Origin: Mizuhopecten yessoensis
Taxonomy: Eukaryota
Assembly: GCF_002113885.1 (NCBI RefSeq)
Contig: NW_018480020.1
Location: forward strand, 222,163 to 286,162
Length of the DNA: 64,000 nt
Reading direction: 5' to 3'
Shown: positions 35,316 through 60,860 of the stretch, piece by piece
How positions within the stretch are numbered: position 1 is the first letter of the stretch
Layout: each line of letters starts with the position of its first letter
Notes under the pieces: model-generated
Seen by the model: the letters and a program-made list of their open reading frames with translations, nothing else
The model's database searches: none
What the model was told of the DNA's origin: nothing
Made by a program: the position numbers and the translations under genes

Positions 35316-38300
35316 ATGGCATCCAGCAGCAACCTCGACGAGTATATGGCCAAGAAAAAAAATATGAAAAGAACGCTTTCAAATATTACGCAATTGGAGA
35401 ATAAAGTTTTCACGCAGCCTCCGAGATACGAGAATGACACTGAGTTTTTTAAATCAGTCATTCTTAAAACTCAGGAAAGACTATTGTCTATAATAAAGGA
35501 CCCAAACTTCGGACCGGATAAAAACCGCGTATTTTGTTCTGTCGCTAGAAAATTCCTTGGCGATCTGAACAATCTTATATATTATACAGCAACAACAAGG
35601 AAGGATAAGTTTGAGACAGGTAAAATCATTGGAGACGAATTGGTAGAAAATTCGACGATAACATTTTTTTGCAAGACGATACTGAAATCCGAAAAAGATC
35701 TCCCCGCACTGTCCGAGGCGGCGAAAGTGTGTGTGGACATTCTGAATGACATCGCTAACTATTCCGCCGCTGTGTGTCGGACGTGTATGGATTATAAAGG
35801 CATGTTGCGCTTCATCAGAGAGGCTTTAGAAATGTGGCGGAAACCTCTGCATAGCGGCCAATTATCGGTATGTTAAGTTCAGGTTTATCGCAGGCACTTA
35901 ACTTTATGCAATAAAATAAATTAGATAAATAACGGGAAATCTAATTTAGTATTAGACCCGTCCGGAGCCTGAATGACCTCTATACACCATCCTCGACACT
36001 CCAGGGGTTACACTCGCTTTTGCTCCATGCACCCCTCGAATATGTCATAGTAAAATTGAAGGAACGCGGTTAGCTATTTGATTGATTTTATGTTGAAAAA
36101 ACGACCAATGGCTAGGCTGATACCGCTCATTTGAAGATTATGGAGGAGCGACACACAACTTCAAAACCAGTCAATTTTACCGTTAAGCGACCGCGAGATT
36201 ATTATGGTGTACATCAAATGATTAATATAGTCCTACCTTTTCGTCTCATCCCATGGTGTCACACTCGGAGCCTTAGAATTTGTCATGACATATTTCAGGG
36301 GTACAGAGAGCATAAGTGCAAATAAACTTTACATTAAAATTACTTAATACATTTGTCAATTAAGTTAATCTTTCTATAAAAACGCCTGTATACAAAGACC
36401 TTTTTTCAGGACAGGAACAAATCACTCCATAATAAACTCTATGTACGTGTTATGGCTAATTATTTTAATATTGTTCTGAAATATTAACATTTATGATTGC
36501 ATAATTTACGAGGAAAAAAACTTACTATATGTCTACAATAATATTCCCATATCCTATCCCATATCAACCCTAGAAACATATAAACCCTCGACAAATATCA
36601 ACCCTTGGGGCTCTGGGCCCTCGGGCTGACATAGATGTATCGGGTGTTACGGGGTAGGATATACAAGGATAAAATCACATGGTAACCTCTAATCAACCCA
36701 TATCGTAGACGGGTTAATGCTAAACGTTTTTTTGTCAATTGATACTTTCCGATAAATGTGTTGTTTTTATACTGTCGGCAGCCGGAACACGCCAACCACA
36801 TGTACACGTTCGTTGGATTAGTACATAATTCGTGTATGTGTTGTACAACCGTGACTGCTACTGTCCGCTCCTCCGGGATCATCAAAGTGCTTAAGGTAAG
36901 TGTACCGATATTATTTGGTTTGGTTTTATTTGGATAGAGACCTTGTTATAATTAACAGCTACATGTGAGGTAATTAAAGACGCGCCTCCATTGTATGTAT
37001 TGTATGTGTGTAATATGTGCTGGAGACGGTATGTTGGGGTATTTGCCTCCAAGCAACCATCCAACTACTGACTATGTTCGACGTTTTTGGAGTCGTGGTG
37101 TCGTCCATGCAAGGGTTGTAATGCATCACCGGAAAAGCTAACTTACCAGTAAGGTAGTATTTCCTCTCAAATTCTTGAGCTGACTTACCAATGCTTCCCT
37201 AATGAAATAACATGCCAAAGGAAGCCAGATATTTATTCCATCAGTCATATTATACTGACAACTGGTTAACCAGTTGTTGCCGGTACCCTAAACACTGAAC
37301 GTTAAGCAGGGAATGACAACTACCATTTTTAAGGACTTTGGCATGTACTGGCATGGCGATAGAGCTCATTCCCTTCCTCACATTGACGAACGTTCAACAT
37401 CAAAGTCAAAAGTGAGGTATTGCCAAGGAAGGCGCTAATGAACGAAAAGTAGTTAGAAGTAGAGAGAAACACACATATCTCAAATATTGCAAAGGGTCCA
37501 GCAGATTTATTTTGGTCGCTTTGTGTCCTAAGTAGAGGTCACAAACACAAATCCCCAACTCTGCAGGGAGTTCCTACATCAGTCGCTTCTTACGATTTAT
37601 GCCGTGAGAAACAGCAGGTATATTTATTTCTAGTTCCCCACCTGCAGGGGTGTTTCATGTGTGTAAACAAATCAAACATTTTAAAGTTGACACCAAAGAG
37701 GACACACGACCATGGAGGCCAGTTGATGTAACATCAAAGAAGGACATTGCTGCTTTGAAAACAATAATCAAGGACGATGGTCGATATACTATTTCTGAGA
37801 TAGCTTATATGATTGGTATTTCAGATGGCAGTACACATCACATTCTGACCAAGTTCTTGAAATTATATAAGAAAATAGATCTCCCAATTTTTGACATCTG
37901 TACAAAAGGCAAAACGTTCAATGAAATATGCTTAACTATATTGAAAAAAGTACGGTAATTGCGGCTCAAGAAAATAATATAAGTTACTTACAGGGAATGA
38001 TACTCGGGTCTATTATTTTGAACCCAGAAGCGCATTAATAACTAGCATTTGTCGAGAAATCAAGAAAAGCCAGTGACTGCAAAACTTATAACAAGCGCCA
38101 ATAAAGTTCTTGATGCCATTTATTCAATTCTAGCAGACGTGTGGTTCAGATACCTTACAAAGAAGTGAAACTATCACTGCCAATTTTAACAGAGACAAAG
38201 TACTGAAGTTTGTTAAAAAATCTACGTGAAATAACGTCCAAGTAAAGGGTTGAATGTCATCCGCTAATTCACGACAACGCTTCATCCCACAAAAGCAATA

Positions 38301-41300
38301 TTGTACAGGCATTTTTGAAGCAAGATAAGATAGTACAGATTGACCACCCATCTTATTCACCAGATTTTAGTCCTTTGACTTCTTCCTGTTTCCGTTACTA
38401 AAGAATAACGCTCTTTGGGAAACGATATGCTTCTAGGATTGATCTGGGTAGTGCAGTCTTCCAGTACTTTGCCAGTATATCAAAGGGAGACTACCGCGTA
38501 GCGATTACGTCACGGATAGCGCGATTGCGAAAGTGCGTTTCTGTTAAGGGGGGATACTTCGAAGGATTGTAAAAGAAAGGTCGAACTCTATACATCACAT
38601 ATGCGATTGCTGACTCTACTGACAGAATTTATTGAATGGCCCTCGTACTACATTGAAGGAACGGCGTACCGAATTGCCAGCCAATCGACGTTGGTAGATA
38701 TTTTGTTTATGGCGAGACACCCTAACCACCTCTTTATATTGTTATGGTTTTAAATGTGATGATACATTAATTATTAATTTGTATGATTATTTTCAAAATA
38801 AAAGCCATTTTCCGATTGGTCATTTCAGCGTGGATACATAGCGAGAGTGTAAAAAACACTCGACTTTACGCTCACTATAAACCGCAATTAGAAAAAAAAA
38901 CTTTCCGAGTACGCGATATTTCTCAAAATTGTTTGAATACAACATACTGTTTGGTCATTTAAGTTGTATTACGTTGGATGTTTAGTATTCATGTTTGGCT
39001 GTCAAAGATCTGTTTATTTACTTAAAGATTTGTCAATAAAACTTAAGTTTACCTGTCTTGTTGTCAAGGGATATTAAGTTTACCTGTCGTTTTGTGAATG
39101 GAGATTAAGTTTACCTGTCTTGTTGTCAAGGGATATAAAGTTTACCCGATTTTTGTCAATGAATATGTCATTAATCTGTTGCGTTGTCAAGGGATATTAA
39201 GTTTACCGTTGGTGTTGTCGAAGACTTTTGAGTTACCTGATGTGTTGTTAAAATCGTTGTCCGTCCTATTATCAAGGACATTAACATTTAACATTAAATT
39301 TTGCCGTATTGTCAACGACTATTAACTTTCCAGTGTAATGTACTTCAATAGATTTGCTGTCTTGCAATTGTTGTTTAAACCATATTGTTTTGGTCATCAA
39401 TGACAATAGCATTTCACATTTCGTGATAAAATGTCACGTGACCTGTTCTTTTGCGTTGTTAAGGAGATCCTGCTGTACCCAGACCTTAGTAACGAGTACG
39501 GTATGATGGTGGTAGCCGCGATTGCCGACATCATGGACGAAGGAGACAGTGACTCGGTGCTTCGGAAGGATGATGACTACAAGTGGGTCAGGTTATTTAT
39601 AGATCACCTTAAAGAGGCAGTAAAATGTCCTGTCTTGCAACACAACGGATGGTTTTCGTTCGAATGTGGCCGAGGTGAGTTTCCCTGACGTCAGAGGTAG
39701 AATTAGGCGTTAGAACACCATTTATTATTAACAACATGTCTGACCTGGTAGCACTTAAAAACACAATCTTGAATTGGTGATAATTATGTTATAACTACAA
39801 CTGAAAACAGAATATCTATGACCTGGGATTCACTACTGTCACCCGGCGATAAAAACGTAAATTTTAAAACATGGCCTTCACCAAAATGAAACACAAATGG
39901 ATCATTCGTTTGGAGGAAAGTACCACCGTAACAGAAAAGTAAACGGAAGGACGGACGTCCTGTGTGATTGCTAATCCTTGCCATTTAAGCATACAAACAT
40001 GTCGCTTACTTTTGTTTTTTTCAGTGCTACGACAGTTATCCTGTTTTGATGCCAACAAGATGATTCTAGTAGACCTGCATACTTTGCCAGCTCTTGTTGA
40101 ATTAGCGCGGATTAATGAAGAAATATGTCTTTTTGGTAGGTATGAATCTACGCATCTTTACATGTTTTACAGTTTACAACCTTTTGAAATTTTCAAACAG
40201 AACAAACTTTTGTCCTTTTGACAAAAACTCCTTCCACATAGTTGCTCTTTGGCTGGAAGGCATTATGACTCTATGCTCCTCATGCATCGATCTTTTATGT
40301 CCTCAAGTGCTTTTGGTGTCCTCGTACAAAAGGTATCACGCATGAATGCGCTTTCACTTCCGTGTTTTGCTGTCATTTCATTTTGATTATTTACAATGTA
40401 ACAGTGATCTTTTCGTTTTCGCAGAGGCAGTGACGGCACTGAGTCAGCTGGCCTTCGAGCCCGGGGCACAGAAAGCAATGATCGAGGACGGAGAGGGACA
40501 GACGATCCTCCTCCTTTTTGCACTGGCTAAAGATTGCACATTCCAGGAGATACGGGAGATAGCGCGTGGTACGATCTGGACCATGGCCATTCCACTTCGA
40601 GGGTCGCCAACCTACGGACCACAAGGTCTGTTGTAGGACGCACATTGGAGTTACATTTATATACATAAGACAAGGACATATCCGTGGACAAAATGTTTGG
40701 CAACATTATTTTGGACGATATCTAACTCTTTTTTTTTTTATTTATTTTTTATTAATTATGGATTGCTTGAGGTGAATGAGAGGTTATATTGGATGATACT
40801 CATTTCTTCTACATCCTCGAAGGCTGGATCATAAGGACGTGGAGGTCTGAAATGAGATTTGAAATATCATTTCGGTGTTACTATTTATTGAAACAGCAGT
40901 GTACTATTCATTTCCTTTCGATTGTATTGTCACAGAAAAACGCTGCCAAATGCAATGCATTCCTCCTGAAAAGATTCATATGTTCCATCTTGTTTAATGA
41001 TAACAACTAATGCTTTTGATTTTGGTGAGTATGAGGATAATGGGTCTGAAAAACTGAGATTGACGTGAACAAAAGTCCATTATTGATAAATATGAACCCG
41101 ATAAAGCGATATTGACCGACACGAAATTCCTAATTGTTTTTATAAGATAGAAATTATTATTATTGTTTTATCATTCAACAAGACGCACGTAAGTAAATAA
41201 AAATCGTCAAGAGAAATGTACTGTATTTGGCAGAGAGCATTGTGCCGTTACAAACGAAAAGACGTCATGAAGTGTATATTGATCTTACGTTTTTTTAAAG

Positions 41301-44300
41301 AGTAACACTGAGTCGTTATCAAACATTCTCAACCTCCACGTAATTTTGATTCAACCAATGAGGTTGTAGGGAAACTTATATTGTCTAATGTAATGTGATG
41401 TCATCTTTTAATATCCACCATCGAGGTCATTATAAGTCACAATATACAGTGATGTGCCATACGTACTGCAGGTTTTGTTGTTTTCCAATTGGGTTCTGCT
41501 GGTGTGTAACTTTATTTTGTTTTGCAATAGATTTTCCAAAAGTCGGGTTGGTTCCATTTAGATGACATTTTAAACAAAATTTAAGAATGTCATTCTACCT
41601 TCTATGTTTAATACTTAAATCAATACATGCCTATCAGCTGGTTAAAATCAATTTAGGCGAAATGTTGAACAAAAATAAAATAAAATATAAGAAAGTCACC
41701 TTTTACTTTTCCTCGTGTGTAAAACTGTTACTCAATGCATGCCTATCAGCTATGGTTCCATTTAAACAAAATTTTGAACAGAATTAAAAATTATGAGAAA
41801 GTCATTATACCCTCTCCTCATCATCTGTAATACTTAAATTAATGCATGCGAACCAAAAAAAGCAATCCAGCTAAAGTGTTGAAACACTGAAATATATATA
41901 TTTTTGTGTTCATTTCATTCTTTTGCAGTGACCTCACTGTTTTCCAAGAAAACGCGAGGTCATATAATGATCAGTTACTCGAGAGAGCAGAGGCAGGTTT
42001 TACAGGATATCCGGGCGGAGTTGGAGGCAAATAAATTTACGGTGTGGATGGACGTGGACAGAATGAGGGGCGACGTGTACGAGAGAATGGCAGAGGCTGT
42101 TGAAAATGCCGCCGTCGTAATTCTTGCCATGTCAAGGAGCTACAAGATGAGTGAATACTGCCGGAGAGGTAAATATTGTTAATTTTGATACGGATGCTTA
42201 AGGATCCCTGTCCCAAAACAATATATTTTTCGTACATAGAGTAACTTCCCCTTAATTTCATTTTAGATCCTAATTGTAGCGTGACGTGGCCTGGGTTCTA
42301 CCGATGAAGCGACAGTATAATGATCGGAGGTCCAGGATTCGAATCCTGGTCTGGCTCCGTTCCATTTTTAACATACAGAAAACTCTTGTTGATTTTTTTT
42401 TATTTCATCTTTATAATTTTCATAAAAATTCTGCAAGGTATGGTTTTCAGAATTGGTTTGTTAAAGTTATAGTCATGCAGTCATTGACAGTGATACGGGG
42501 ATCCTTAAGGTAAAGGGTACCAACAAGCTAGACAACCATAAGATATAAACTGCAAAAGTCGAACTCATCACTCTTTACGCTTTACCAATGTAGCTATCTA
42601 GGATATATAAATACTCAGTTTACAGCGTATCGGCTGCAAAGTCTATGGAAACAAAACGAATAGGAGAGATAAATAACTTGACTGGAGAAGGTATTTATCT
42701 TCTTTATAGTAGGGAGACTAATCCAAGTCAGAACACACTTGGTGGACCACTTCTTTGCTATTTTAGTTAAGATAGTAGTACTACTTACCTTAAAGTAAGT
42801 TACATTATGACTTTTGTACGAAATAATCTGGCTTAGTAAGGTCGATTTTACCTAAATAGTTTGTTATACCTCTAAAACCAGTCATCACAAATGTATGGAA
42901 ATATTTCACTCGCGAATCATTATTTAGAAACGTATCTTTTAGTATGTGAAATTTTGTTTCAATGGCGCTAAAATTAGCCCCAAGAGATTCCAATAGAAAA
43001 AGGTAAAAATGCATGAATAATAACATAAATCTGGGTAAATAGCAAATGCTTCTGCAGGATGCTCTATGTACCTCGTGATGAAAAAATGGTATTTTGGTCG
43101 TCTAAAGAAGCCTCAATATTGCCTGTTAAAATTGTTCATGTTCTTATTCCGGATGTGGTCAATTTTATGCTAGGGCTTTGTAGAGAACTCATAAGCCTAC
43201 AGCTTAGAACATTTGAATCTTGTCAGAACCTCGGAACCGAACATTCTTTAGTATTGATCAATGGCAAGTTTTAGCATGATCCAAGTTTTTGTTGCTTCTG
43301 ATGAATCTGTGTTTGCCCTCTATGTCTTCATAATAAACAAATACCGGATACATTTCTTTAAGACTATATACATTAACCTAGTGGCCGTATCTTGCTGTAT
43401 GGTGTGCTAACACGCCTTTGTCGATGAAACGTATCACTATTTCGATCTTTAGGTTCTGTTTACGGATTTAGGAGTGTCTACGTATGGAACTTCTGTTAAA
43501 GGTGGTTTCCGCTTCAAGGGCAGATAATAAAGATGTCAATTTCTCTTGCTTTTCAGAGGCGGCGTACGCTGGAAAGTTAAATAAACAAGTTATTCCACTT
43601 AAGGTCGAGAAGGACTACGATCCTGATGGCTGGCTCGGTATAATGACGGCCGGCTCGTTTTTCTATGACTTTGGAAGGAAATCGTTCAAGTCTGTTATGG
43701 CTAAACTCCTCCATGAGCTCCAGCACTTGGCTTATCGACAAGGAGAGGGCGTGGATAGCCGCCGTAAATCACCAGAAGCTGCCATTCCCACCAGTGCGGT
43801 TCCAGAGCCCCCTCCCATTCAGCTATCTTCCTCAATGACATATTCAAGCCAAAATAACAGGATCGCATCCCAGACATCTCGGGTGACTTACATGTCCAGA
43901 AAGGTACCTACATGTATTAATACAAAGGACACCGATTGCCCGATAGATATTGTCAATGGTCAAGTATACTCTATCACTGACCCAGTATACTGTCAATGGC
44001 AAAGTGTTCTCTTTTTTGATGTTCGGGTACACACTCTCTATGTTGTATTACCATGTCACCATTATTTTGAGTAATTCGTGTTTGTATCACCTCATTTGCT
44101 TCACAAATATAAAAATGCTCATATTTCACAGAGGTTTAATATTCAATATATTCGCAGCCTAAAACGAACCTACGCTGTCATTCGGCAAATTTTCTCGTTT
44201 ACGGAAAGTGCCGACAGTTCCCGATTGTGTCATTTGGCTATCAAAGTACTGAACATGTAAACCTTCAGGAGCCGCTATCTAAACATATCGCTATATTTAG

Positions 44301-47051
44301 ATTTGTTTTTCTTTACATTCAATTATATAATTAATGCAGATTGTAGCGACCGCTAACAACCGGCGTGGTGTTTTGCACGTCGTCAAAGCTGTGACGTCAG
44401 ACTCATAAAGTTGGCGATCATTCACAGATTTTGGCTGTTGATTTATGATCCATGCATGAAAAGTTAACTGAAAAATGAATTATACGATTTTGCCATTAAA
44501 AGAAACATATGTAAGGTATATTTTGTAAAGAGTCATAATCCAATAATTAGTTGTTCGATTTAGAAATCTGTGTAGTCAGCTTGTATTAGCATTGCCATAC
44601 AGACGGGAATATAAAAGAAAAAGGTGCATGGAATCATTATAAAAATATAATCCATTGTTACTATACCCTGTATCCCAGATACTCCTTGGTTTACGCTCAT
44701 TTATTCTTTTTGCAACCTAAGAATATGGCATAGCAAAATCGAAGGCACGCGTTTAATTTTACCGTTATCCAACCGCAGGATTCTGATAATGTGCATCAGA
44801 GGATCCAACTAGTCATCCACAAGGTGGCGCACACTAAGGTTTCAATATGTTCATGACATGTTCTAGAGGTTCAGAGAGAGTAAGTGAGCCTAACCCCTGG
44901 AGTATCGAGGGTGTATAATCTGAAGTCTGAATATATTTGTATATAGGAATGTTGTTTTAAAGAAATTCCGAGAAATTGATTTAAAAATGTAAACTGATGC
45001 AACTATACCCCGAATATCTTTGTATAATGGATTTTGTTTTCTGTTTTGTTTTTGTAGAAATTCCGAGATATTGATAAGCAGACATTTCAGGAATGGCTCG
45101 ATAACTACCAACTACCAAGGTAAGACAAGTAGGGGATATACTTCTGTATAAACCTGTCGTCATCATCTTCTACAAAAATATGCGTATGATGTTATCTTCA
45201 TTATTGGATATTTTGTAGTGGAAAGTTGAGATTTCGATTGCATGCTGAACAATTATATTACACAAAGTAGTGTGAACGTGAAAGATATAGCCTGTCAATT
45301 TTACATTTATGTACATATATCTATGGCAGGATTATCAAAAATAAATAGCTTAAATCATTTAAGATATCTTTTGTAATATATTAAGTATGATGCATAGTAT
45401 ATGATATATTTTACATAGTATATGATATATAATTTTTTATAATTTAAATCACGTTCTCATATATATATCTCATTAAGAACCAGATTTAATAGCATTAGAA
45501 AAAATATCTGACTTTCCTTGATTCGTCCAGAATGATCCTCAGAGGAGAAATCAATTGATCAATATTCAGAATAAGAAATCAATTTATAAAGGATATTTGA
45601 CTAAGAAATATTGCTTATTAGCTTAGTTAGGATCATTTTTTTTTTTACAATTTCCTGACGTTTTCTGTACATTTTGCAGTATTTGTAAATTTAGCACCTA
45701 TTATAATTGCTAAGTTCTTTTAGAACCAAAACCGTAATTGAAAAGTTATTTTGCGAGCTTTCGAAAACGTTTACTTCCTCAAGCAGAGAGTTGAAATGAC
45801 CGGTGTCTCGACTCTAAACCACAATATATATATTTTCTGACAACTGACTTTACGGACTCGGCACATTGTGGCCTAGTGAGTTGTTTACGTCGGTCAAGAG
45901 TCGAGACACCGGTCATTTTAATCCTTGCTTGACAAAGGAAACAGACGTTTTCGAAAGCTCGGAAACTATTTTTTTCAAAAACTGTTTGTGTTCAAAACAA
46001 ACTTTGCATTTATTATTCATACCAAACCGATGAATCTTATTCCGAATAGAACGGATAATCATATAATTATGATGTCTTGTTTTGCTTTTCAGAGACCGAT
46101 TTGAGTCTCTAAGACCAAAGGACATATTGTTTCTTGCCAGAATGAAGGACGAGGTGAGAGGAAGATATTTCTGTCAGACCAAATGTCATACTATCCCATA
46201 AGATATGCAATAATAGCCTGATTCAAACCTTATTTTAGTACCACTTTCTCTAGTGAGAATACATTTGATCGGTTTTAATCTTTAATTCAAGATTTCATAG
46301 ATTGCAAGATTGTAAACCATCATTACATTTTATGAATACGTAAAAATGAATAGGAATCAATATATATTTCTTATGTTGAAATTAAATTATAAAGATTATT
46401 CTCAATGTTTTGATTTATGAAGACATATACCTAGAAAGGTTTTCTTTTTTATAAATATATATATATATTTAATCAAATTATAAAGATTGTTCTGAATGAT
46501 GTAATTTCTGAGCATTCTAATATACCCTTTAGATTCCCTACGGCTCTCTGACTATGCCTCGACAGACATAGATATAAAGATATTCTCATTTAGAAAATTA
46601 ATTTTCAGTTGGATAAAAGGTATTAACACCAACCAGATTGCATAACCCTTTCACCACTGTAGACCATAATGGATTCACCCAGATCAATGCATGGGAGAGT
46701 CTACTGAAGTTATATAGGGATGAAAGGGTTAACTAAGTATCATTTACAGAACAGAGTATCCAATAAGTGCATCGAGTGCAACTGGTGTCTGTTAAACCAT
46801 CTTTGAATGACTACTTGCCTCTTTCCAACAATATTTACGTCGCAAGGAATGTTAACAGATTCATGTTTCTTTATCAATTACCGCCAATCACACGGATTGT
46901 CCAGTCTATAATGCACGCATTTGTTTCACATTTACAGGCTCCAGAAAGTTACTACTCTATAGGTAGGAGGCTGTTCAAAGACAAATCAGACCCTTTATTA
47001 AAAACAAGGATAATGGCGGACCTTACCGAGGCACTTGACGATCTCGTATGA
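35316..47051 (+). CDS. ARM-repeat / TIR (TIR_2-type) / SAM-like domain protein, ~670 aa, 10 coding exons
   Basis: Phase-consistent exons: 35316-35867, 36782-36895, 39464-39674 (AAG acceptor), 40025-40135, 40425-40625, 41929-42168, 43557-43903, 45058-45119, 46093-46153, 46938-47051 (2013 nt incl. stop). ARM-like LRQLSCFDANKMILVDLHTLPALVELA / ALSQLAF / ARGTIWTM. TIR GHIMISYS..VWMDVDRMRG..MAEAVENA..SEYCRR|EAAYA..VIPL..DGWLG. SAM-like FQEWLDNYQL..APESYY..LTEALDDL*. Probable non-coding exon ending 34231 (AG|gtaagt). Confidence 0.85.
36905..37400 (-). mobile_element. SINE remnant(s), Meta-SINE-like core
   Basis: TTTGGTTTGGTTT tail at ~36915; CAGTCATATTATACTGAC...CCAGT...ACCATTTTTAAGGACTTTGG at ~37240-37345 resembles the reverse complement of mollusc Meta-SINE cores (from memory). 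Confidence 0.4.
37650..38647 (+). mobile_element. Decayed mariner transposon (transposase pseudogene, 3' TIR retained, 5' end lost), intronic
   Basis: HTH segment RPVDVTS...IIKDDGRYTISEIAYMIGISDGSTHHIL; TGNDTRVYYFEP (degenerate TGDETW); HPSYSPD..DFFLFP; GGYFEGL*; TIR GACAGAATTTATTGAATGGCCCTCG+TA at 38621-38647; multiple stops and frameshifts. Confidence 0.85.
39040..39330. repeat. Degenerate ~31-33-bp tandem repeat (TTAAGTTTACCTGTCTTGTTGTCAAGGGATA), ~9 copies
   Basis: Periodic AAGTTTACC...TGTCAA motif. Confidence 0.75.
41929..43903 (+). CDS. TIR-domain exons (41929-42168 and 43557-43903) of the ARM-TIR-SAM gene
   Basis: Box1-like HIMISYS, VWMD and the CxxE motif; the Glu codon is split G|AG across the intron. 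Confidence 0.9.
45745..45968. mobile_element. Intronic MITE/foldback with ~70-bp imperfect TIRs
   Basis: GAGCTTTCGAAAACGT...AAATGACCGGTGTCTCGACTCT versus AGAGTCGAGACACCGGTCATTT...ACGTTTTCGAAAGCTC. Confidence 0.7.
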
Positions 47052-47689
47052 TGACGTTTATGTACGACCTCCTTTATATGTTTGAATGATTTCAGTGCCA
47101 TGTCAGTTGATTGAAAACGGTTGATTTTTTTTAGATTTACAACAAAGATTATGGCCGTCAGGTCAAACATGATTTTCACTTCAGTCAACTGAAAGGTCTA
47201 GAGCTTTAGATAGCATTTCAATTTTAGTGCAAATGCTGGTCATTTCCGACGCTTCAGGGGTTATGCTTACTTACGCTCTCTGCATTCGGGGTGCAGGGAA
47301 TACAAGTGAGCGTAACCTCTGGAGTATCCAGGATACTAGTTACCGTAAGTTTGACTCCTGATGACGGCGGTAACTTATATGGAACATGTAAACATCGTCT
47401 TAAAATAATCGTTAGTATATTGTTTATTATATGGGCAACAATTGGTGAAAGTATGAATTGTCTACGTCAAATTCAATGTCAATTGTTTTGTATGTGTGAT
47501 TAAATTAAAATTAGCGCAGCAGTTGGAAAGGTTCAGGATTTAAATAAATACAACGTCTGTCGGGACAGTGGAAACGATTTTAATCAAAGGCTTATTATCT
47601 GTTACCTGACAAAGAGGAAAAACCATATTCACTTCTCATATTAGTTCTATTGTAAGGAGTGTATGTAACAGTGTGTGAATGTGGGAGGA

Positions 47690-50600
47690 TTGTATGTGAC
47701 ACAGTGAAACTTTCGGAAGATGTTGTGTGACACATCGTAACTTGGGAAGATGGTGTGAGGCACACTGTAACTTGGGAAGATGGTGTGAGGCACATTGTAA
47801 CTTAGGAAGATGGTGTGAGGCACATTGTAACTTGGGAAGATGGTGCGAGGCACATTGTAACTTGGGAAGATGGTGCGAGGCACAGTGTAACTTGGGAAGA
47901 TGGTGTGAGGCACATTGTAAATTGGGAAGATGGTGCGAGGCACATTGTAACTTTGGGAAGATAATGTGTGACACATTGAAACTTTGGGAAGATTGTGTGT
48001 GACAAAGTGTAATTTCGGGAAGATGGTGTGTGAAGCACATTATAACTTTGGGAAGATGGTGTGTGACAAAGTGTTACTTTGAGAAGATGGTGTGTGACAA
48101 AGTGTAACTTCGGGAAGATGGTGTGAGGCACGTTGTAACTTTGGGAAGATAGTGTGTGACAAAGTGTGAATTTGGGAAGATTGTGTGTGACAAAGTGTAA
48201 CTTCCGGAAGATTGTGTGAAGCACATTATAACTTTGGGAAGTTGGTGTGTGACAAAGTGTAACTTCGGGAAGATGGTGTGAGGCACGTTCTAACTTTGGG
48301 AAGATAGTGTGTGGCACATTGTAACTTTGGGAAGATGGTGTGAGGCACATTGTAACTTGGGAAGATGGTGTGAGGCACATTGTAACTTAGGAAGATGGTG
48401 TGAGGCACATTGTAACTTGGGAAGATGTTGCGAGGCGCATTGTAACTTGGGAAGATGGTGTGAGGCACATTGTAACTTTGGGAAGATGGTGTGTGACAAA
48501 GTGTAACTTCGGGAAGATGGTGTGTGACAAAATGTAACTTTGGGAAGATGGTGTGTGACAAAGTGTGAATTTGGGAAGATTGTGTGTGACAAAGTGTAAC
48601 TTCCGGAAGATTGTGTGAAGCACATTATAACTTTGGGAAGTTGGTGTGTGACAAAGTGTAACTTTGAGAAGATGGTATGTGACAAAGCGTAACTTCGGGA
48701 AGATGGTGTGAGGCACATTGTAACTTGGGAAGATGGTGTGTGGCACATTGTAACTTTGGGAAGATGGTGTGAGGCACATTGTAACTTAAGAAGATGGTGT
48801 GAGGCACATTGTAACTTGGGAAGATGGTGTGAGGCACATTGTAACTTGGGAAGATGGTGTGAGGCACATTGTAACTTGGGAAGATGGTGTGAGGCACATT
48901 GTAACTTGGGAAGATGGTGTGAGGCACATTGTAACTTGGGAAGATGGTGTGAGGCACATTGTAACTTGGGAAGATGGTGTGAGGCACATTGTAACTTGGG
49001 AAGATGGTGTGAGGCACATTGTAACTTGGGAAGATGGTGTGAGGCACATTGTAACTTGGGAAGATGTTGCGAGGCGCATTGTAACTTGGGAAGATGGTGT
49101 GAGGCACATTGTAAATTGGGAAGATGGTGCGAGGCACATTGTAACTTTGGGAAGATAATGTGTGACACATTGAAACTTTGGGAACATTGTGTGTGACAAA
49201 GTGAAACTTCGGGAAAATGGTGTGTGAAGCACATTATAACTTTGGGAAGATGGTGTGTGACAAAGTGTAACTTTGAGAAGATGGTGTGTGACAAAGTGTA
49301 CCTTCGGGAAGATGGTTTGAGGCACGTTGTAACTTTGGGAAGATAGTGTGTGGCACATTGTAACTTTGGGAAGATGGTGTGTGACAAAGTGTAACTTTGG
49401 GAAGATGGTGTGTGGCACATTGTAACTTTTGGAAGATGGTGTGAGACAAAGTGTAACTTTGGGAAGATGGTGTGTGGCACATTGTAACTTTTGGAAGATG
49501 GTGTGAGACAAAGTGTAACTTTGGGAAGATGGTGTGTGGCACATTGTAACTTTGGGAAGATGGTGTGTTACAAAGTGTAACTTTGGGAAGATGGTGTGTG
49601 GCACATTGTACCTTTTGGAAGATGGTGTGAGACAAAGTGTAACTTTGGGAAGATGGTGTGTGGCACATTGTAACTTTTGGAAGATGTCGGGAGACAAAGT
49701 GCAACTTTGGGAAGATGGTGTGTGGCACATTGTAACTTTGGGAAGATGGTGTGAGGCACATTGTAACTTGGGAAGATGGTGTGAGGCACATTGTAACTTT
49801 GGGAAGATGTTGTGTGACGAAGTGTAACTTTGGGAAGATGGTGTGTGACAAAGTGTAACTTTGGGAAGATGGTGTGAGGCACATTGTAACTTGGGAAGAT
49901 GGTGTGAGGCACACTGTAACTTGGGAAGATGGTGTGAGGCACATTGTAACTTGGGAAGATGGTGTGAGGCACATTGTAACTTGGGAAGATGGTGCGAGGC
50001 ACATTGTAACTTGGGAAGATGGTGCGAGGCACATTGTAACTTGGGAAGATGGTGCGAGGCACATTGTAACTTTGGGAAGATAATGTGTGACACACTGAAA
50101 CTTTGGGAACATTGTGTGTGACAAAGTGTAACTTCGGGAAGATGGTGTGTGAAGCACATTATAACTTTGGGATGATGGTGTGTGACAAAGTGTAACTTTG
50201 AGAAGAAAGTGTGTGACAAAGTGTAACTTCGGGAAGATGGTGTGAGGCACATTGTAACTTTGAGAAGATGGTGTGAAGCACATTATAACTTTGGGAAGAT
50301 GGTGTGTGACAAAGGGTAACTTTGAGAAGATGGTATGTGACAAAGTGTAACTTCGGGAAGATGGTGTGAGGCACATTGTTACTTTGGGAAGATGGTGTGT
50401 GACAAAGTGTAGCTTTGGGAAGATGGTGTGTGGCACATTGTAACTTTGGGAAGATGGTGTGTGACAAAGTGTAACTTTGGGAAGATGGTGTGTGACAAGG
50501 TGTGACTTCGGGAAGATGGTGTGCGACAAAGTGTAACTTCGGGAAGATGGTGTGTGACAAAGTGTGAATTTTGTAACTTCGGGAAGATGGTGTGAAGCGC

Positions 50601-51172
50601 ATTATAACTTTGGGAAGATGGTATGTGACAAAGTGTGAATTTGGGAAGATGGTATGTGACAAAGTGTAACTTCGGGAAGATGGTGTGCGGTGGCACATTG
50701 TAACTTTGGGACACTGTAACTTGGGAAGATGGTGTGAGGCACATTGTTACTTTGGGAAGAAGGTGTGTGACAAAGTGTAACTTTGGGAAGATGGTGTGTG
50801 ACAAAGTGTAACTTTGGGAAGATGGTGTTTGACAAAGTGTAACTTTGGGAAGATTGTGTGTGACAAAGTGTAACTTCCGGAAGATGGTGTGAAGCACATT
50901 ATAACTTTGGGAAGATGGTGTGTGACGTGTGTGGCACATTGTAACTTTGGGAAGATGGGGTGTGACAAAGTGTAACTGTGAGAAGATGGTATGTGACAAA
51001 GTAACTTCGGGAAGATGGGGTGTGGCACATTGTAACTTTGGGAAGATGTTGTGTGACAAAGTGTAACTTTGGGAAGATGGTGTGTGACAAAGTGTAACTT
51101 CGGGAAGATGTCGTGTGACAAAGTGTAACTTTGGGAAGATAGTGTGTGGCACATGGTAACTTTGGGAAGATT
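47690..51172. repeat. ~3.5-kb compound minisatellite, 30-33-bp units: core GTAACTT(T)GGGAAGATGGTGTG plus tail AGGCACATT / TGGCACATT / TGACAAAGT
   Basis: About 110 units; homogeneous 30-bp run at ~48780-49140; larger blocks duplicated. Confidence 0.97.
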
Positions 51173-55294: not shown

Positions 55295-55478
55295 TAGTAG
55301 CAGTAGAATACGACTAAATCCTTTTTAATGTTAACCATGAAAACACACCAAACATCCGACATAAGATGTGATTGATGGCGTACTTTTGGTCATAAGATCA
55401 GAATACGTAAGTGACCAGGTGTGTGAACTACTTTTAGATGATGCTACCGAGTTAGTTTAGGCCAAAATGGATACGATG

Positions 55479-55656
55479 CGCCAATAAGGAATGACACCGT
55501 GTTCTGATGGTAAAGACTTTATGTAACACAACACACAATAACCACATGTTACAACAAAATGGAATCAAGCCGGAAGAGGAAGTGCCCAGCATGGGGCCGC
55601 TTAGAAGTCAGTGACGAGGCCGCTTGATATAAGAGAAAGAAAATAACGTACTGGCG
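55479..55656 (-). repeat. 3' LTR
   Basis: Direct repeat of 60683-60860. Confidence 0.95.
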
Positions 55657-55905
55657 TGATTGCCTTTATCTCTAATATGTCCTTTTGAGATAATAACTAA
55701 TCCTATATTAATGGCACAAGTATTCATGAAAACGAAGAAGGTGAACACTCAATACAATAAGAAAACGATAACTAGGGTGCAGTGTATCTGTCCCGTAACC
55801 TGTCCTTTGCAAAATACATGTCTATACATGTACTAATAACACACAAAGTAGGTCAGTAAATGATAGCAGTACTGAAAAAAGGTCACAGTTCACACAACGG
55901 TTTCA

Positions 55906-57657
55906 TCAGCTGAGGTCCCAATCCTGGTTTTGCAAATGAGGAGTAGTACAAGAGCGGGTCGATCGACGAAGTGGAGACTCTGGCACACTTTGCGGAACAG
56001 AAGTCATCGGATCAGACGTATCGGGAACGGAGATGATAGCATCAGGTACAGGAGGCTGTGCAGGCGCGGGAGGCTGAGCCAACACAAGAGGTACTGGCAA
56101 GACCGGTTGCAGGTGTAGCGGCTGATGAGAAGTAACTGTAGGGGGCATTTGAGGAGGACACGACCGGTGACCAAATGTCAGAGCAGGGCGTGGGGGAATT
56201 AAGCCACACGGGTCATCGTCAGAGTCAGAGTCTAAAGTTTCATCTGATACTTGACCTCTGATGGGTCCCTGAGGCGACTGCACAAGAATTGTTGGTAGTA
56301 CTGGGTAACACTGCGACATGGGTACGGTGTACACCTTACTACGGTACTGCGAACTGGTAAACTTCCGTAGCTGGCACGTATGATCATTGACAATGTGAAC
56401 GACAAGACATTTTTCGTGTACTTTGGTTTTGTTCTTATCACACATGAGAAAGACTAAGTCGCCGACGGAAATACTACTATGGCGTATTTTCATGGTCCCA
56501 CCGGCTTTGGTTATGGCCCTAGGTACGTGGTTCTGTTCACGAGACAAACTCTGTCTGTGGATGATCTGCCGATCGATAATAGGTAACTGCTCTCCAGTAA
56601 GCTGGTCTCTTTGAGTCCAGAGTTCGCGAGAAGAGAGACCATCACGCCGAATCCGCGAATTCATCTGAGCAGTGGCGAGGGCTAAAGTGACTGCCGAGAC
56701 AGTGCCTCCCTCTGGGGATAGGTGAAGAATCTCCAACCCAAGTTCCTCTACTGCACGCTCCGCGACTGGGTTCTTATTGGTGTTCTTCACTCTCCCAATC
56801 TCAAGGTGAATGCCATAGGAGAGAAGAATTTTGTCTTTCTGGAGGGCGCAGAAGCCAGGAGCTGGATCAACACGAATGGTAATGCCACCGTCGCATAATG
56901 AGCGTAGCTCCGCGGACATAATCAGGAGAGCGTTTCGAAGATCGTCATGCTTCTCGGTAGGGATCAATGAGGCTAATGTGTATGATGAAACCGTCTCTCT
57001 CAAAACTAAAATGTATTGACGGTAACGACGCATCACGTCCGCAGCAAATGTCACTCCGACTGAGGTGGGTGCCTCAACGGAAGACTGAGGCTGAAAGTGC
57101 TTTGGAAAAGACTTTACAGACTGACAGAAATGGCAGGCAGAAGACACAGATGTATTGGCCTTGTCAACGTCCAGGGCAAAGAAGTACCTATTGAAAAGGC
57201 GCTTAGTCTGATATTTAGACGGGTGGCTGAATCGGATATGCAAGGCTGTCAATAACCCATCAAGGGCCGTGCGTGGAACAACAATACGTTCGCGTGTAGG
57301 TTGGAACGGTTGAGAGTCTCTAACGACAAGCAGGCCGTCGGAAGCTATAACAACGTCCCTGAGGTAGCGCTTGACATCAGGGATCTTGGTGGCCTTCTTA
57401 GAAGGACGAGTACCTTGGCTGAGTTGAGAGTGCACGCGTCGTAAGTCTGGACACTCATGTTGTGTTGCGAGCCATGCGGCGCGGCTGGTAAACGGCATGT
57501 GGATTGTCAGTTCAAGAACATCATTCACAGATACATCGCGGACGACAGAATCTTCCATTTCTGCTATAAACTTGCAAACCTGACATGAAGAGTCGAGACA
57601 TTCGATGGGGTTCCTGCTGGCAAAGTCGGATGGGAGATTGGCGATTCCTGCGATATG
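55906..57657 (-). CDS. Pol C-terminal part: end of RNase H region and integrase (HHCC + DDE) with Pro-rich tail
   Basis: HIAGIANLPSDFASR (RH end), HIRFSH...CHFC zinc finger, FAADV / RVDPA / NPVAERAVEE catalytic residues. Confidence 0.88.
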   Translation of the reverse strand, partial: HIAGIANLPSDFASRNPIECLDSSCQVCKFIAEMEDSVVRDVSVNDVLELTIHMPFTSRAAWLATQHECPDLRRVHSQLSQGTRPSKKATKIPDVKRYLRDVVIASDGLLVVRDSQPFQPTRERIVVPRTALDGLLTALHIRFSHPSKYQTKRLFNRYFFALDVDKANTSVSSACHFCQSVKSFPKHFQPQSSVEAPTSVGVTFAADVMRRYRQYILVLRETVSSYTLASLIPTEKHDDLRNALLIMSAELRSLCDGGITIRVDPAPGFCALQKDKILLSYGIHLEIGRVKNTNKNPVAERAVEELGLEILHLSPEGGTVSAVTLALATAQMNSRIRRDGLSSRELWTQRDQLTGEQLPIIDRQIIHRQSLSREQNHVPRAITKAGGTMKIRHSSISVGDLVFLMCDKNKTKVHEKCLVVHIVNDHTCQLRKFTSSQYRSKVYTVPMSQCYPVLPTILVQSPQGPIRGQVSDETLDSDSDDDPCGLIPPRPALTFGHRSCPPQMPPTVTSHQPLHLQPVLPVPLVLAQPPAPAQPPVPDAIISVPDTSDPMTSVPQSVPESPLRRSTRSCTTPHLQNQDWDLS

Positions 57658-57690
57658 NNNNNNNNNNNNNNNNNNNNNNNNNNNNNNNNN
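57658..57690. other. Assembly gap inside pol (most of RNase H missing)
   Basis: 33 N between RT thumb (PATVQGLRS) and HIAGIAN. Confidence 0.95.
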
Positions 57691-58670
57691 ATGAGCGTAG
57701 GCCCTGTACAGTAGCAGGGGGTTCAGTAGCTGATAAAGCCGCCACTTTGTGGGGGCTAGCCTGTAGAGTTCCATTGGACCAAATCCAGCCTAGGACAACC
57801 GCCCTTTTCGGGCAAACTACAGTCTTGGACGCTGACAAACGAAGGTTCTTCTTTTGTAGTAAGAGAAGGACACGTCGCCAATTGAGAAGAATCTCCTCAT
57901 GGGTTTGGCCACCGATGTACAAGTCGTCAGCAATTTTGGCAACACAGCCTTCCTGGATCAGATCACCAAGGATCCTGGACATGAGCTCTTCGAGACAGGT
58001 TTCAGATCCGGGCATGCCCATGGCGGAACTAGTGTACACACGTATGCCCTTGAATGGAGTAGCGACGCCGCAGTACTTCATGGATGACGTTGCCAAAGGA
58101 ATTTGGTAAAAGGCCTTAGCTAAGTCAGTAATGATCAAAAGGCTCCATTTACCAATTTCACGCAAAACACCATCAACGTTGGGCATTAGCGAAGGTTGCG
58201 GCTTGCTGTACTGAGCAAACTCACAAAATGAAGTAACAAGTCTGGTTCCACCATTGGGTTTCCGTATCAATAAGGAAGTGTTGAGATATTCAACCTGGAC
58301 ATTGACCTGCTCAGGCCTAGCGAAGACACCCATTGACTCCAAATCATCAAACTTTGCCTGTAACTCCTCCATGGTGCCCCTGTTGTATTGGGGAAGTCGT
58401 CCTTTACGCTGAGGAGGGAGAGGTGGACCCATATTCACAACAGCTTCGATAGGTCCACTCGCGCCGTTATACTTGGAAATGGAGGGGTTGAAAACATCAT
58501 CAAACTCGGTGTGGAGTGACTTGAATCTATCGCGGATGGTTGAGTCTAAACAGGAGTCGGGGTCAACGACGACATCACGTGAAAAGGGCTTTGCATTGGT
58601 AGAAGGCGTATCACGTACACTGGTGGAAGGTAGGGGGTCATATGGTACGGACTTTATAGGAGTACTGGTA
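57691..58670 (-). CDS. Reverse transcriptase region of pol
   Basis: RKPNGGTRLV, TDLAKAFYQIPL, AMGMPGS, KIADDLYIGG, VLGWIW. The frame stays open upstream of the listed start back to ~58670. Confidence 0.9.
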
Positions 58671-60354: not shown

Positions 60355-60671
60355 GTCGCTATATCACACTAAATGGTATTGATATGATCAGGATGATGAA
60401 ATGAACACACAAAAATACAGACACAATTCACGATCGTGTTGAATACATAAAATAAAGGACGAATTGGATCACAGTTCACAAGAAAAAACAGCGGGTATGA
60501 CGTGGAATGAATGAAAATTCTTATTTGATTATGTGAATCCTGTAGGCCCTAACGTTCCGAGCCCCTATGTAAACGCGGTTGTTGTTGACGTTACAGCCTT
60601 CACTTTAAAGTACAGATGTCACGATGTTGGTTGACTACACGTTCATTAGAGTCTTCTAGGCATGGGTAATG

Positions 60672-60682
60672 CGCTGCCACCA
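60672..60682 (-). promoter_or_regulatory. Primer-binding site complementary to tRNA-Leu 3' end
   Basis: Minus strand TGGTGGCAGCG immediately after the 5' LTR; complementary to ...CGCTGCCACCA-3'. Confidence 0.8.
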
Positions 60683-60860
60683 CGCCAATAAGGAATGACA
60701 CCGTGTTCTGATGGTAAAGACTTTATGTAACACAACGCACAATAACCACATGTTACAACAAAATGGAATCAAGCCGGAAGAGGAAGTGCCCAGCATGGGG
60801 CCGCTTAGAAGTCAGTGACGAGGCCGCTTGATATAAGAGAAAGAAAATAACGTACTGGCG
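60683..60860 (-). repeat. 5' LTR
   Basis: Direct repeat of 55479-55656, followed on the minus strand by the PBS. Confidence 0.95.

What the first reader, a model, noticed from the sequence alone, without database searches (positions are those of the whole stretch)
35316..47051. Hidden 10-exon ARM-TIR-SAM protein: SARM1 domain set in permuted order with intact catalytic-position glutamate
Seen: ten exons join in frame with matching phases into ~670 aa, comprising an N-terminal helical/ARM region, a TIR_2-type domain (HIMISYS...VWMD...SEYCRRE), an S/P/T linker and a C-terminal SAM-like domain built from three tiny exons, two of which are absent from the ORF track. No signal peptide or TM segment is evident. 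Established: SARM1 is ARM-SAM-SAM-TIR, with ARM as autoinhibitory sensor, SAM as oligomeriser and TIR as Glu-dependent NADase; plant and bacterial TIRs use the same CxxE glutamate to cleave NAD+ or make signalling nucleotides. Inference: this is a cytosolic, sensor-gated enzymatic TIR of invertebrate innate immunity or cell death, distinct from SARM1 and MyD88. ARM-TIR proteins have been catalogued in invertebrate genomes, but I know of no defined ligand or product for them.
Basis: partly seen in the sequence, partly recalled or inferred. Interest (0 to 1): 0.85.

Follow-up and report, generated by a model that had tools for sequence, protein, structure and literature searches.

The report
Scallop ARM-TIR-SAM gene, already catalogued
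This is a real, expressed ten-exon scallop gene for a cytosolic armadillo-TIR-SAM-like protein whose TIR domain probably cleaves NAD+, but the gene is already annotated and its oyster counterpart's TIR has already been reported to make cyclic ADP-ribose.

Summary
Ten GT-AG exons (35316-47051, + strand) join in frame into 670 aa. The product is identical to Mizuhopecten yessoensis XP_021341509.1 / UniProt A0A210PHI7 (LOC110442303), so the gene is not hidden. RNA contigs and raw reads show junctions 5-6, 6-7, 7-8 and 8-9, and 4-5 indirectly, linking the ARM, TIR and C-terminal exons.

- **Domains:** an armadillo solenoid (aa ~41-400; Z ~20 to armadillo-repeat proteins), TIR_2 (Pfam 1.4e-19), a disordered Ser/Pro-rich linker and a C-terminal five-helix domain.
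- **C-terminus:** Pfam misses it, but it folds as SAM. The nine best of 48,161 chains are all SAM domains (Z 6.3-5.3), and relatives carry Pfam SAM_1/SAM_2 in the same position.
- **Glu477:** it is invariant in the aligned family and aligns with SARM1 E642 and RPS4 E88.

A 2026 preprint already lists this protein with Glu477 as the catalytic residue. It also reports Glu-dependent cADPR production by the TIR of an oyster protein that I find collinear with this one (53% TIR identity). Four more distant TIRs that it places in the same cluster as the scallop TIR gave no product. The ARM-TIR-SAM(-like) order recurs in other bilaterian phyla, including chordates, and in marine picoeukaryote-like contigs.

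Catalysis, ARM gating and SAM oligomerisation remain inferred for the scallop protein. Interest is modest.

The parts
35316..35867 (+). Exon 1 (aa 1-184): start codon, disordered N-terminus, first armadillo-type helices
   Evidence: Model pLDDT is below 50 for aa 1-35 and helical with high confidence from about aa 42.
36782..36895 (+). Exon 2 (aa 185-222), ARM region
   Evidence: 100% identical to P0004.
39464..39674 (+). Exon 3 (aa 223-293), ARM region
40025..40135 (+). Exon 4 (aa 293-330), ARM region; holds most of the Pfam Arm repeat hit (aa 301-339)
   Evidence: The junction to exon 5 is shown by 7 raw reads as a loose end.
40425..40625 (+). Exon 5 (aa 330-397), last ARM helices
   Evidence: RNA joint 40623>41927 in X1, X5, X21 and X24.
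41929..42168 (+). Exon 6 (aa 397-477): first half of the TIR_2 domain, ending in SEYCRR plus the first base of the Glu477 codon
   Evidence: Pfam TIR_2 8e-15 on the exon alone. RNA joint 42166>43555. Split codon G|AG.
43557..43726 (+). Exon 7, first part (aa 477-533): Glu477 and the second half of the TIR domain
   Evidence: Pfam TIR_2 1.4e-19 on P0004 aa 409-516. Fold match to the SPARTA TIR, Z 17.7, rmsd 2.0 over 128 residues. E477 is invariant in 11 aligned family members and aligns with SARM1 E642 and RPS4 E88.
43733..43903 (+). Exon 7, second part (aa 536-592): Ser/Pro/Thr/Arg-rich disordered linker
   Evidence: pLDDT below 50 for aa 536-592; composition.
45058..45119 (+). Exon 8 (aa 593-613): SAM-like helix 1 (FQEWLDNYQL)
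   Evidence: RNA joints 43901>45056 and 45117>46091.
46093..46153 (+). Exon 9 (aa 613-633): SAM-like helices 2-3
46938..47051 (+). Exon 10 (aa 634-670 and TGA stop): SAM-like helices 4-5
   Evidence: C-terminal model pLDDT 88.5. SAM domains are the top fold matches.

Best explanation
The locus is the Yesso scallop gene LOC110442303. It is a transcribed ten-exon gene for a 670-aa soluble protein made of an armadillo-repeat solenoid, a TIR_2 domain, a disordered linker and one divergent SAM-fold domain.

It belongs to an old, conserved ARM-TIR-SAM(-like) family. The family is found in molluscs, other bilaterian phyla including chordates, and marine picoeukaryote-like organisms. At least about a dozen loci with this TIR type lie in this scallop genome.

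The most likely mechanism is as follows. The TIR domain is an NAD+-cleaving enzyme that uses Glu477 and makes cyclic ADP-ribose, as reported for the TIR of the collinear oyster protein. Activity needs TIR-TIR association, which the C-terminal SAM domain promotes. The ARM domain restrains or triggers activity by binding an unknown partner or ligand.

Shown here: gene structure, transcription, domain folds, conservation of the Glu. Taken from a preprint: catalysis in the oyster relative. Inferred by analogy with SARM1 and other TIR enzymes: oligomerisation, ARM gating and an immune role.
For: - **Gene model:** the translation is identical to P0004 / XP_021341509.1 / A0A210PHI7.
- **Transcription:** spliced RNA links exons 4 to 9.
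- **Domains:** TIR_2 at 71 bits against a cut-off of 28, and Arm exactly at its cut-off. ARM fold Z ~20 over aa 41-385, and TIR fold Z 17.7 to the SPARTA TIR.
- **SAM fold:** the nine best of 48,161 chains are all SAM domains, including the SAM domains of SARM1 and TIR-1. The only PDB sequence hits of the C-terminal profile with E below 1 are three SAM-domain chains. Relatives have Pfam SAM_1/SAM_2 after the TIR. hhalign between the two C-terminal profiles gives E 5e-4.
- **Conservation:** the SxxCxxE Glu is invariant and aligns with the catalytic Glu of SARM1, RPS4 and Cat1.
- **Oyster relative:** P0019 is collinear over 606 aa, with 53% TIR and 47% SAM-like identity. It carries the motifs of the oyster TIR that gave Glu-dependent cADPR in E. 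coli (text).
Against: - No assay exists for the scallop protein.
- The preprint placed its TIR in a broad cluster (A0A0B7AZE4_1). The four tested members of that cluster (Chlamydomonas, amphioxus, gar, Phallusia) have no activity entered in Table S4.
- The preprint data come from overexpression of isolated TIR domains in bacteria, and its authors call the immune implication speculative.
- According to that preprint a Glu at this position is widespread among eukaryotic TIRs, and only 12 of the 61 animal TIRs it tested were active. The Glu is therefore necessary but not diagnostic.
- Pfam does not call SAM on this protein, and Foldseek found no significant match for the C-terminal model.
- The ARM domain resembles generic armadillo proteins rather than SARM1's ARM, so SARM1-style metabolite sensing is not indicated.
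Confidence: 0.6

Rival explanations
1. The protein is a non-enzymatic adaptor or scaffold. Its TIR only makes TIR-TIR contacts with TLRs or MyD88-type adaptors, while ARM and SAM recruit other proteins. This is the long-standing hypothesis for invertebrate ARM-TIR / ecTIR-DC proteins.
For: - The literature treats these proteins as putative adaptors or regulators.
- Four tested TIRs of the broad cluster that includes the scallop TIR gave no detectable product.
- Only about a fifth of the tested animal TIRs with a Glu were active.
Against: - The Glu, and the aromatic residue four positions before it, are invariant across 11 family members as little as 21% identical overall.
- The TIR of the collinear oyster protein is reported active and Glu-dependent.
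- The nearest solved TIR by fold is an NADase, SPARTA.
Confidence: 0.25
2. The protein is a SARM1-like executioner. Once activated it depletes NAD+ to kill the cell, rather than making cADPR as a second messenger.
For: It has the same three domain types as SARM1. Some animal TIRs in the preprint deplete NAD+.
Against: [quoted passage not shown] The oyster row shows only the first product column filled; I read that column as cADPR from the control rows, without seeing the header.
- The TIR is no closer to SARM1 than to MyD88 by profile.
- The ARM domain is not specifically SARM1-like.
Confidence: 0.12
3. The model is an annotation artefact or a decaying paralog: exons of separate genes joined by chance, or a pseudogene.
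For: Other loci of this TIR family in the genome carry in-frame stops. Junctions 1-2, 2-3, 3-4 and 9-10 were not seen directly.
Against: - The ten exons contain no stop and all introns are GT-AG.
- One RNA contig spans exons 5, 6 and 7, and the joints to exons 8 and 9 are at the same depth in one contig.
- Full-length orthologs of 72-80% identity exist in three other scallop genera, with all domains conserved.
Confidence: 0.02

Closest known systems
Pacific oyster ARM-TIR protein A0A8W8J0Z4 (639 aa), tested in Hurieva et al. 2026, bioRxiv 10.64898/2026.04.20.719644; represented here by P0019 (640 aa)
   Same: Collinear over 606 aa at 35% identity, with 53% in the TIR and 47% in the C-terminal domain. 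Both have the ISYSREQR and SEYCRREAAYA motifs and the same ARM-TIR-linker-SAM-like order. It is probably the oyster ortholog or co-ortholog.
   Different: Only the oyster TIR has been assayed (cADPR, Glu-dependent, in E. coli). The preprint put the two TIRs in different 40%-identity clusters. SAM is not among the domain abbreviations in the legend of its architecture figure (figure 3).
SARM1 / C. elegans TIR-1 (ARM-SAM-SAM-TIR NAD+ hydrolase)
   Same: The same three domain types. A Glu at the position of E642. The SAM-like model superposes on SARM1 SAM1 (Z 5.7) and on the TIR-1 SAM (Z 5.3).
   Different: The order is ARM-TIR-SAM, with one SAM instead of two and a 57-residue disordered linker. 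The TIR profile matches the SARM1 TIR only at E 0.013, about as weakly as MyD88. The ARM domain is closest to beta-catenin, importin-alpha and designed ARM proteins, not to the SARM1 ARM. It is not a SARM1 ortholog.
Invertebrate 'ARM-TIR' / ecTIR-DC proteins (Gerdol et al. 2017; Aplysia immunome, PMC9334734)
   Same: A cytosolic TIR protein with an armadillo-type N-terminal region, from an expanded mollusc gene family with no assigned function.
   Different: Of the papers I could read, none that treats these invertebrate ARM-TIR proteins mentions a C-terminal SAM-like domain. I could not read Gerdol et al. 2017, so I cannot say which ecTIR-DC family this is or whether the domain was noted there.
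ARM-TIR_2-SAM proteins on marine metagenome contigs (such as P0047 and P0055, from a gene-dense eukaryote-like TARA scaffold)
   Same: The same order of three domains. TIR 38-39% identical (P0047, P0055). The C-terminal profiles align at hhalign E 5e-4.
   Different: Their SAM domain is recognised by Pfam SAM_1/SAM_2, whereas the metazoan one is too divergent. The source organisms were not identified.
SPARTA TIR-APAZ (prokaryotic short-Argonaute NADase), PDB 8ifl
   Same: It is the only TIR-containing chain among the 50 rows shown in a second look at Foldseek's top hits for the whole model: Z 17.7, rmsd 2.0 A over 128 residues, 20% identity.
   Different: It is a bacterial defence protein with a different partner domain. 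The resemblance is in the TIR fold only.

Membership tests
TIR domain (Pfam TIR_2, PF13676) | Score above Pfam's gathering threshold | tested here: met
   71.2 bits against a cut-off of 28, aa 409-516 of P0004. Exon 6 alone scores 55.9 bits.
Catalytic (NAD+-processing) TIR | Glutamate at the alpha-C catalytic position | tested here: met
   E477 aligns with SARM1 E642, the RPS4 Glu and the Cat1 Glu in profile alignments. It is invariant in the family. Table S2 of the preprint calls the same residue independently.
Catalytic (NAD+-processing) TIR | Glu-dependent NAD+ turnover or cADPR-isomer production | not testable with these tools
   Reported only for the TIR of the collinear oyster protein. 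Four more distant TIRs of the preprint's cluster were negative.
SARM1 orthologs | ARM-SAM-SAM-TIR order with tandem SAM domains | tested here: not met
   The order is ARM (41-400), TIR (405-533), linker, then a single SAM-like domain (593-670).
SARM1 orthologs | TIR closer to SARM1 than to other TIR classes | tested here: not met
   Profile E is 0.013 to SARM1, 0.0013 to RPS4, 8e-6 to Cat1 and 0.036 to MyD88. The preprint places it in a different cluster from SARM1.
SARM1 orthologs | Allosteric NMN/NAD+ pocket in the ARM domain | not tested
   I held no SARM1 ARM alignment by reference. The fold search ranks generic ARM proteins highest.
SAM domain | Match to Pfam SAM_1 or SAM_2 | tested here: not met
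   No SAM family at E up to 0.1 on P0004, or up to 1 on P0001. Relatives P0037, P0047, P0048, P0055 and P0061 do match at the same position.
SAM domain | Compact five-helix SAM fold | tested here: met
   Model pLDDT 88.5. The top nine of 48,161 chains are SAM domains: Z 6.3 to 5.3, rmsd 2.0-2.9 A, 56-65 of about 70 residues. Z is modest, as expected for so small a domain, and Foldseek alone was not significant.
SAM domain | Self-association (head-to-tail polymer or ring) | not testable with these tools
   No usable result was obtained; see Tried and rejected.
Armadillo-repeat proteins | Arm repeat signature and a right-handed three-helix-repeat solenoid | tested here: met
   Pfam Arm scores 20.6 bits, exactly at the cut-off, on P0004, and 22.7 and 21.9 on orthologs. 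Fold Z is 18-20 over about 280-310 residues to designed ARM proteins, beta-catenin, importin-alpha and APC.
Invertebrate ARM-TIR / ecTIR-DC class | Cytosolic protein with an ARM-type region plus TIR and no TM segment or signal peptide | tested here: met
   The assignment to a numbered ecTIR-DC family was not tested because the source paper is not held.

The most novel reading that the evidence does not exclude
ARM-TIR-SAM proteins form an ancient eukaryotic lineage of self-assembling cADPR synthases, running from green-alga-like picoeukaryotes to lampreys. They would work in parallel to SARM1. A generic armadillo groove would sense a protein or peptide ligand rather than a metabolite, and a single C-terminal SAM would polymerise the TIRs into an active filament. 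In bivalves the family would have expanded into a set of cytosolic immune sensors.
Probability: 0.3. Interest if true: 0.6.

Novelty: new member of a known kind. Interest (0 to 1): 0.3.

Why it matters
Enzymatic TIR signalling in animals beyond SARM1 is a young topic. This family has a clean tripartite layout of sensor-like ARM, catalytic-type TIR and an oligomeriser-type SAM fold. It is conserved from algae-like eukaryotes to early vertebrates and is expanded in bivalves. The useful addition here is small. The C-terminal domain, missed by Pfam and not recorded for this protein in the preprint's domain table, is a divergent SAM fold. It follows the TIR in members from many phyla. That gives a concrete, testable idea of how these TIRs are brought together. 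Everything else was already on record: the gene, ARM plus TIR, the catalytic Glu, and a product for the oyster relative.

Tried and rejected
- **Complex prediction on two copies of the C-terminal domain:** no verdict (score 0.21, mark 0.32). This is neither support for nor evidence against self-association.
- **Foldseek of the C-terminal model against PDB:** nothing significant. An EphA2 SAM appeared only at rank 10 with E 7.6. The exhaustive VIA search was needed.
- **phmmer of the single TIR sequence against PDB sequences:** no hit. The family profile was needed.
- **Pfam on individual exons:** only the TIR exon was recognised.
- **HMMER search of exon 1 against 1.84 billion representatives:** only two hits, so the extreme N-terminus is lineage-restricted.
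- **Gerdol et al. 2017:** not held, so there is no ecTIR-DC number.
- **Tandem paralogs in the window:** none found.
- **Joined sequence:** I sent no joined sequence of my own to any search or fold tool. The spliced product was represented by database protein P0004, which a local script showed to be identical; the script printed only counts and coordinates.
Full report
**What is there.**
The window is from the Yesso scallop, Mizuhopecten yessoensis. A HMMER search with the translation of the first exon against 1.84 billion representative proteins returned a 665-aa Argopecten protein, P0001. A word-indexed search with P0001 then returned orthologs from Ylistrum, Mizuhopecten and Pecten. Searching these back against the window gave ten collinear blocks on the + strand, and the Mizuhopecten protein P0004 matched them at about 100%.

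A script chose the splice sites. All nine introns are GT..AG, the phases agree, and the CDS is 2013 nt without an internal stop. Its translation has no difference from P0004, which is 670 aa. P0004 is XP_021341509.1 / OWF35959.1 / UniProt A0A210PHI7, 'uncharacterized protein LOC110442303'. I sent no joined sequence of my own to any search or fold tool. The database record P0004 stood in for the spliced product.

**Transcription.**
I could lay reads on one 6000-base stretch, 40400-46399, and used four RNA runs. The result shows joints 40623>41927, 42166>43555, 43901>45056 and 45117>46091. All are GT..AG and have exactly the predicted intron lengths (1303, 1388, 1154 and 973 nt). They appear in assembled contigs of two runs, and the first three also in raw reads.

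One 1703-nt contig carries exons 5, 6 and 7, and the two later joints occur at the same depth in a single contig. A 586-nt contig of another run carries exons 6-7-8-9. Junction 4-5 appears as a loose end in seven raw reads, and its 30 letters lie at 40105-40134, the end of exon 4.

Junctions 1-2, 2-3, 3-4 and 9-10 lay outside the stretch. They rest on the RefSeq model and on ortholog conservation.

**Domains.**
- **TIR.** Pfam calls TIR_2 at 1.4e-19 on aa 409-516.
- **ARM.** Pfam calls one Arm repeat exactly at its cut-off (aa 301-339). In an AlphaFold2 model built on 11 family members, aa ~42-400 form a confident all-helical solenoid. It superposes on designed armadillo proteins, beta-catenin, importin-alpha and APC at Z 18-20 over 280-310 residues (Foldseek E about 1e-6).
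- **TIR fold.** In the same second look, aa 406-535 match the SPARTA TIR at Z 17.7 and rmsd 2.0 A.
- **Linker.** Residues 536-592 are predicted disordered and are Ser/Pro/Thr/Arg-rich.
- **Location.** No hydrophobic segment or signal peptide is evident.

**The C-terminus.**
Pfam finds no SAM domain here, and Foldseek found nothing significant. Three other lines agree on a SAM fold.
1. The domain modelled alone has pLDDT 88.5. In an exhaustive alignment against 48,161 chains, the nine best hits are all SAM domains: DGK-delta, CNK2, SARM1 SAM1, PHC3, Hyphen, liprin, dCNK, tankyrase and TIR-1. Their Z scores run from 6.3 to 5.3 with rmsd 2.0-2.9 A, and most of the next twenty hits are also SAM domains.
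2. A profile of the domain from nine family members hits three SAM-domain chains in the PDB with E below 1: liprin-beta1, SMS1 and Shank2. All are sub-significant. A fourth hit at E 1.3 is an MHC class I heavy chain.
3. Relatives on marine metagenome contigs have ARM, then TIR_2, then a domain that Pfam does call SAM_1/SAM_2. The two C-terminal profiles align collinearly at hhalign E 5e-4.

They come from bivalves, a gastropod, amphioxus, lampreys, hemichordates, tunicates, echinoderms and a bryozoan. An ESM Atlas cluster of 121 mostly molluscan TIR_2/Arm proteins contains the same domain at TM 0.74.

**The glutamate.**
SxxCxxE is invariant in the family alignments. In profile alignments E477 falls on SARM1 E642, on the RPS4 Glu and on the Cat1 Glu. 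Its codon is split across the exon 6/7 junction.

This residue is necessary but not diagnostic. A 2026 preprint reports that most non-TLR eukaryotic TIRs carry it. [quoted passage not shown]

**What is already known.**
Hurieva et al. 2026 (bioRxiv 10.64898/2026.04.20.719644) list this very protein in Table S2. The entry gives TIR 405-533, catalytic GLU 477 and a TPR-clan repeat region at 104-385.

Row 153 of their Table S4 shows that the TIR of a 639-aa Pacific oyster protein (A0A8W8J0Z4) was active, with its first product column filled. From the control rows I read that column as cADPR, though I did not see the header. The text states that a mollusc TIR makes cADPR and that activity was lost on mutating the Glu.

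P0019 and four other oyster proteins carry all three motifs of that tested TIR, and two further oyster proteins carry one of them. P0019 (640 aa) aligns with the scallop protein over 606 residues at 35% identity, through ARM, TIR (53%), linker and the SAM-like domain (47%). It is the likely oyster ortholog or co-ortholog.

Against over-reading this, the preprint places the scallop TIR in a different, very broad cluster. The four tested members of that cluster show no activity. The assays used isolated domains overexpressed in bacteria.

'ARM-TIR' proteins are also a catalogued class in molluscs. I could not read Gerdol et al. 2017. SAM is not among the domain abbreviations in the legend of the preprint's architecture figure. 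Recognition of the C-terminal SAM fold in the animal members therefore seems to be the only new element here.

**Family size and spread.**
A six-frame search of the scallop genome with the TIR profile gave 29 exon-level matches on about a dozen or more loci. These include clusters on two contigs and some copies with stops. The window holds only this one copy.

One Pfam-SAM relative lies on a gene-dense TARA Oceans scaffold among EF-hand, IQ, guanylate cyclase and MFS genes. That fits a picoeukaryote, but the organism was not identified.

**Mechanism and verdict.**
The best-supported reading is a soluble TIR enzyme that uses Glu477 to cleave NAD+ and probably make cADPR. The C-terminal SAM fold would bring the TIRs together, and the ARM domain would act as the regulatory or ligand-binding part.
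- **Shown here:** the gene, its RNA, the three folds and the conserved Glu.
- **Borrowed from a preprint:** catalysis in the oyster relative.
- **Inference:** SAM oligomerisation, ARM gating and an immune role.

A prediction of SAM self-association gave no verdict and counts for nothing either way. The protein is not a SARM1 ortholog. The domain order differs, there is one SAM rather than two, the TIR is no closer to SARM1 than to MyD88, and the ARM domain is of the generic kind.

The finding is sound but mostly already on record: a new, uncharacterised member of a known kind.

Noticed in passing
window 19197-23114 (+): A single uninterrupted 1305-aa ORF rich in Ser, Lys, Glu and Arg, with RS-like stretches and no Pfam match. 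It sits in a block with raised G+C and a strong A-over-T skew. It may be a giant exon of a disordered or RS-type protein.
   Followed up: partly
window 47682-51171: A tandem array of a 31-bp unit (93-bp higher-order unit), about 98 copies at 81-85% match and with strong GC skew. It begins about 630 nt after the stop codon of the TIR gene and produces long spurious ORFs on the - strand.
   Followed up: partly
window 44000-44400, 44600-45000, 45600-46200 (introns 7 and 8): RNA contig depth here is hundreds of times that of the exons, with many loose ends and variant letters. These are dispersed repeats transcribed from elsewhere, not part of the gene.
   Followed up: no
window 58654-60354 (-), and 55906-57774 (-): An ORF with a gag-type aspartyl protease domain, and a second long ORF with no Pfam hit. 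Both lie inside the LTR element that the first-stage note places at 55476-60863.
   Followed up: partly
window 37650-37958 (+), intron 2: A 102-aa ORF with a weak winged-helix HTH match below the Pfam cut-off. It looks like a remnant of a transposase DNA-binding domain.
   Followed up: partly
G000:C5359:49282-50257: This is the closest other copy of this TIR in the genome (E 7e-33). It breaks at the same position of the TIR profile (about 79/80) as the exon 6/7 junction here. It is either a recent paralog or an unmerged haplotype contig.
   Followed up: no
window 40483, 42239 and other sites: Single-base differences from the assembly (for example C>A at 40483 in exon 5) are seen in three of the four RNA runs, all those with reads at the site. 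They are probably alleles rather than RNA editing.
   Followed up: no
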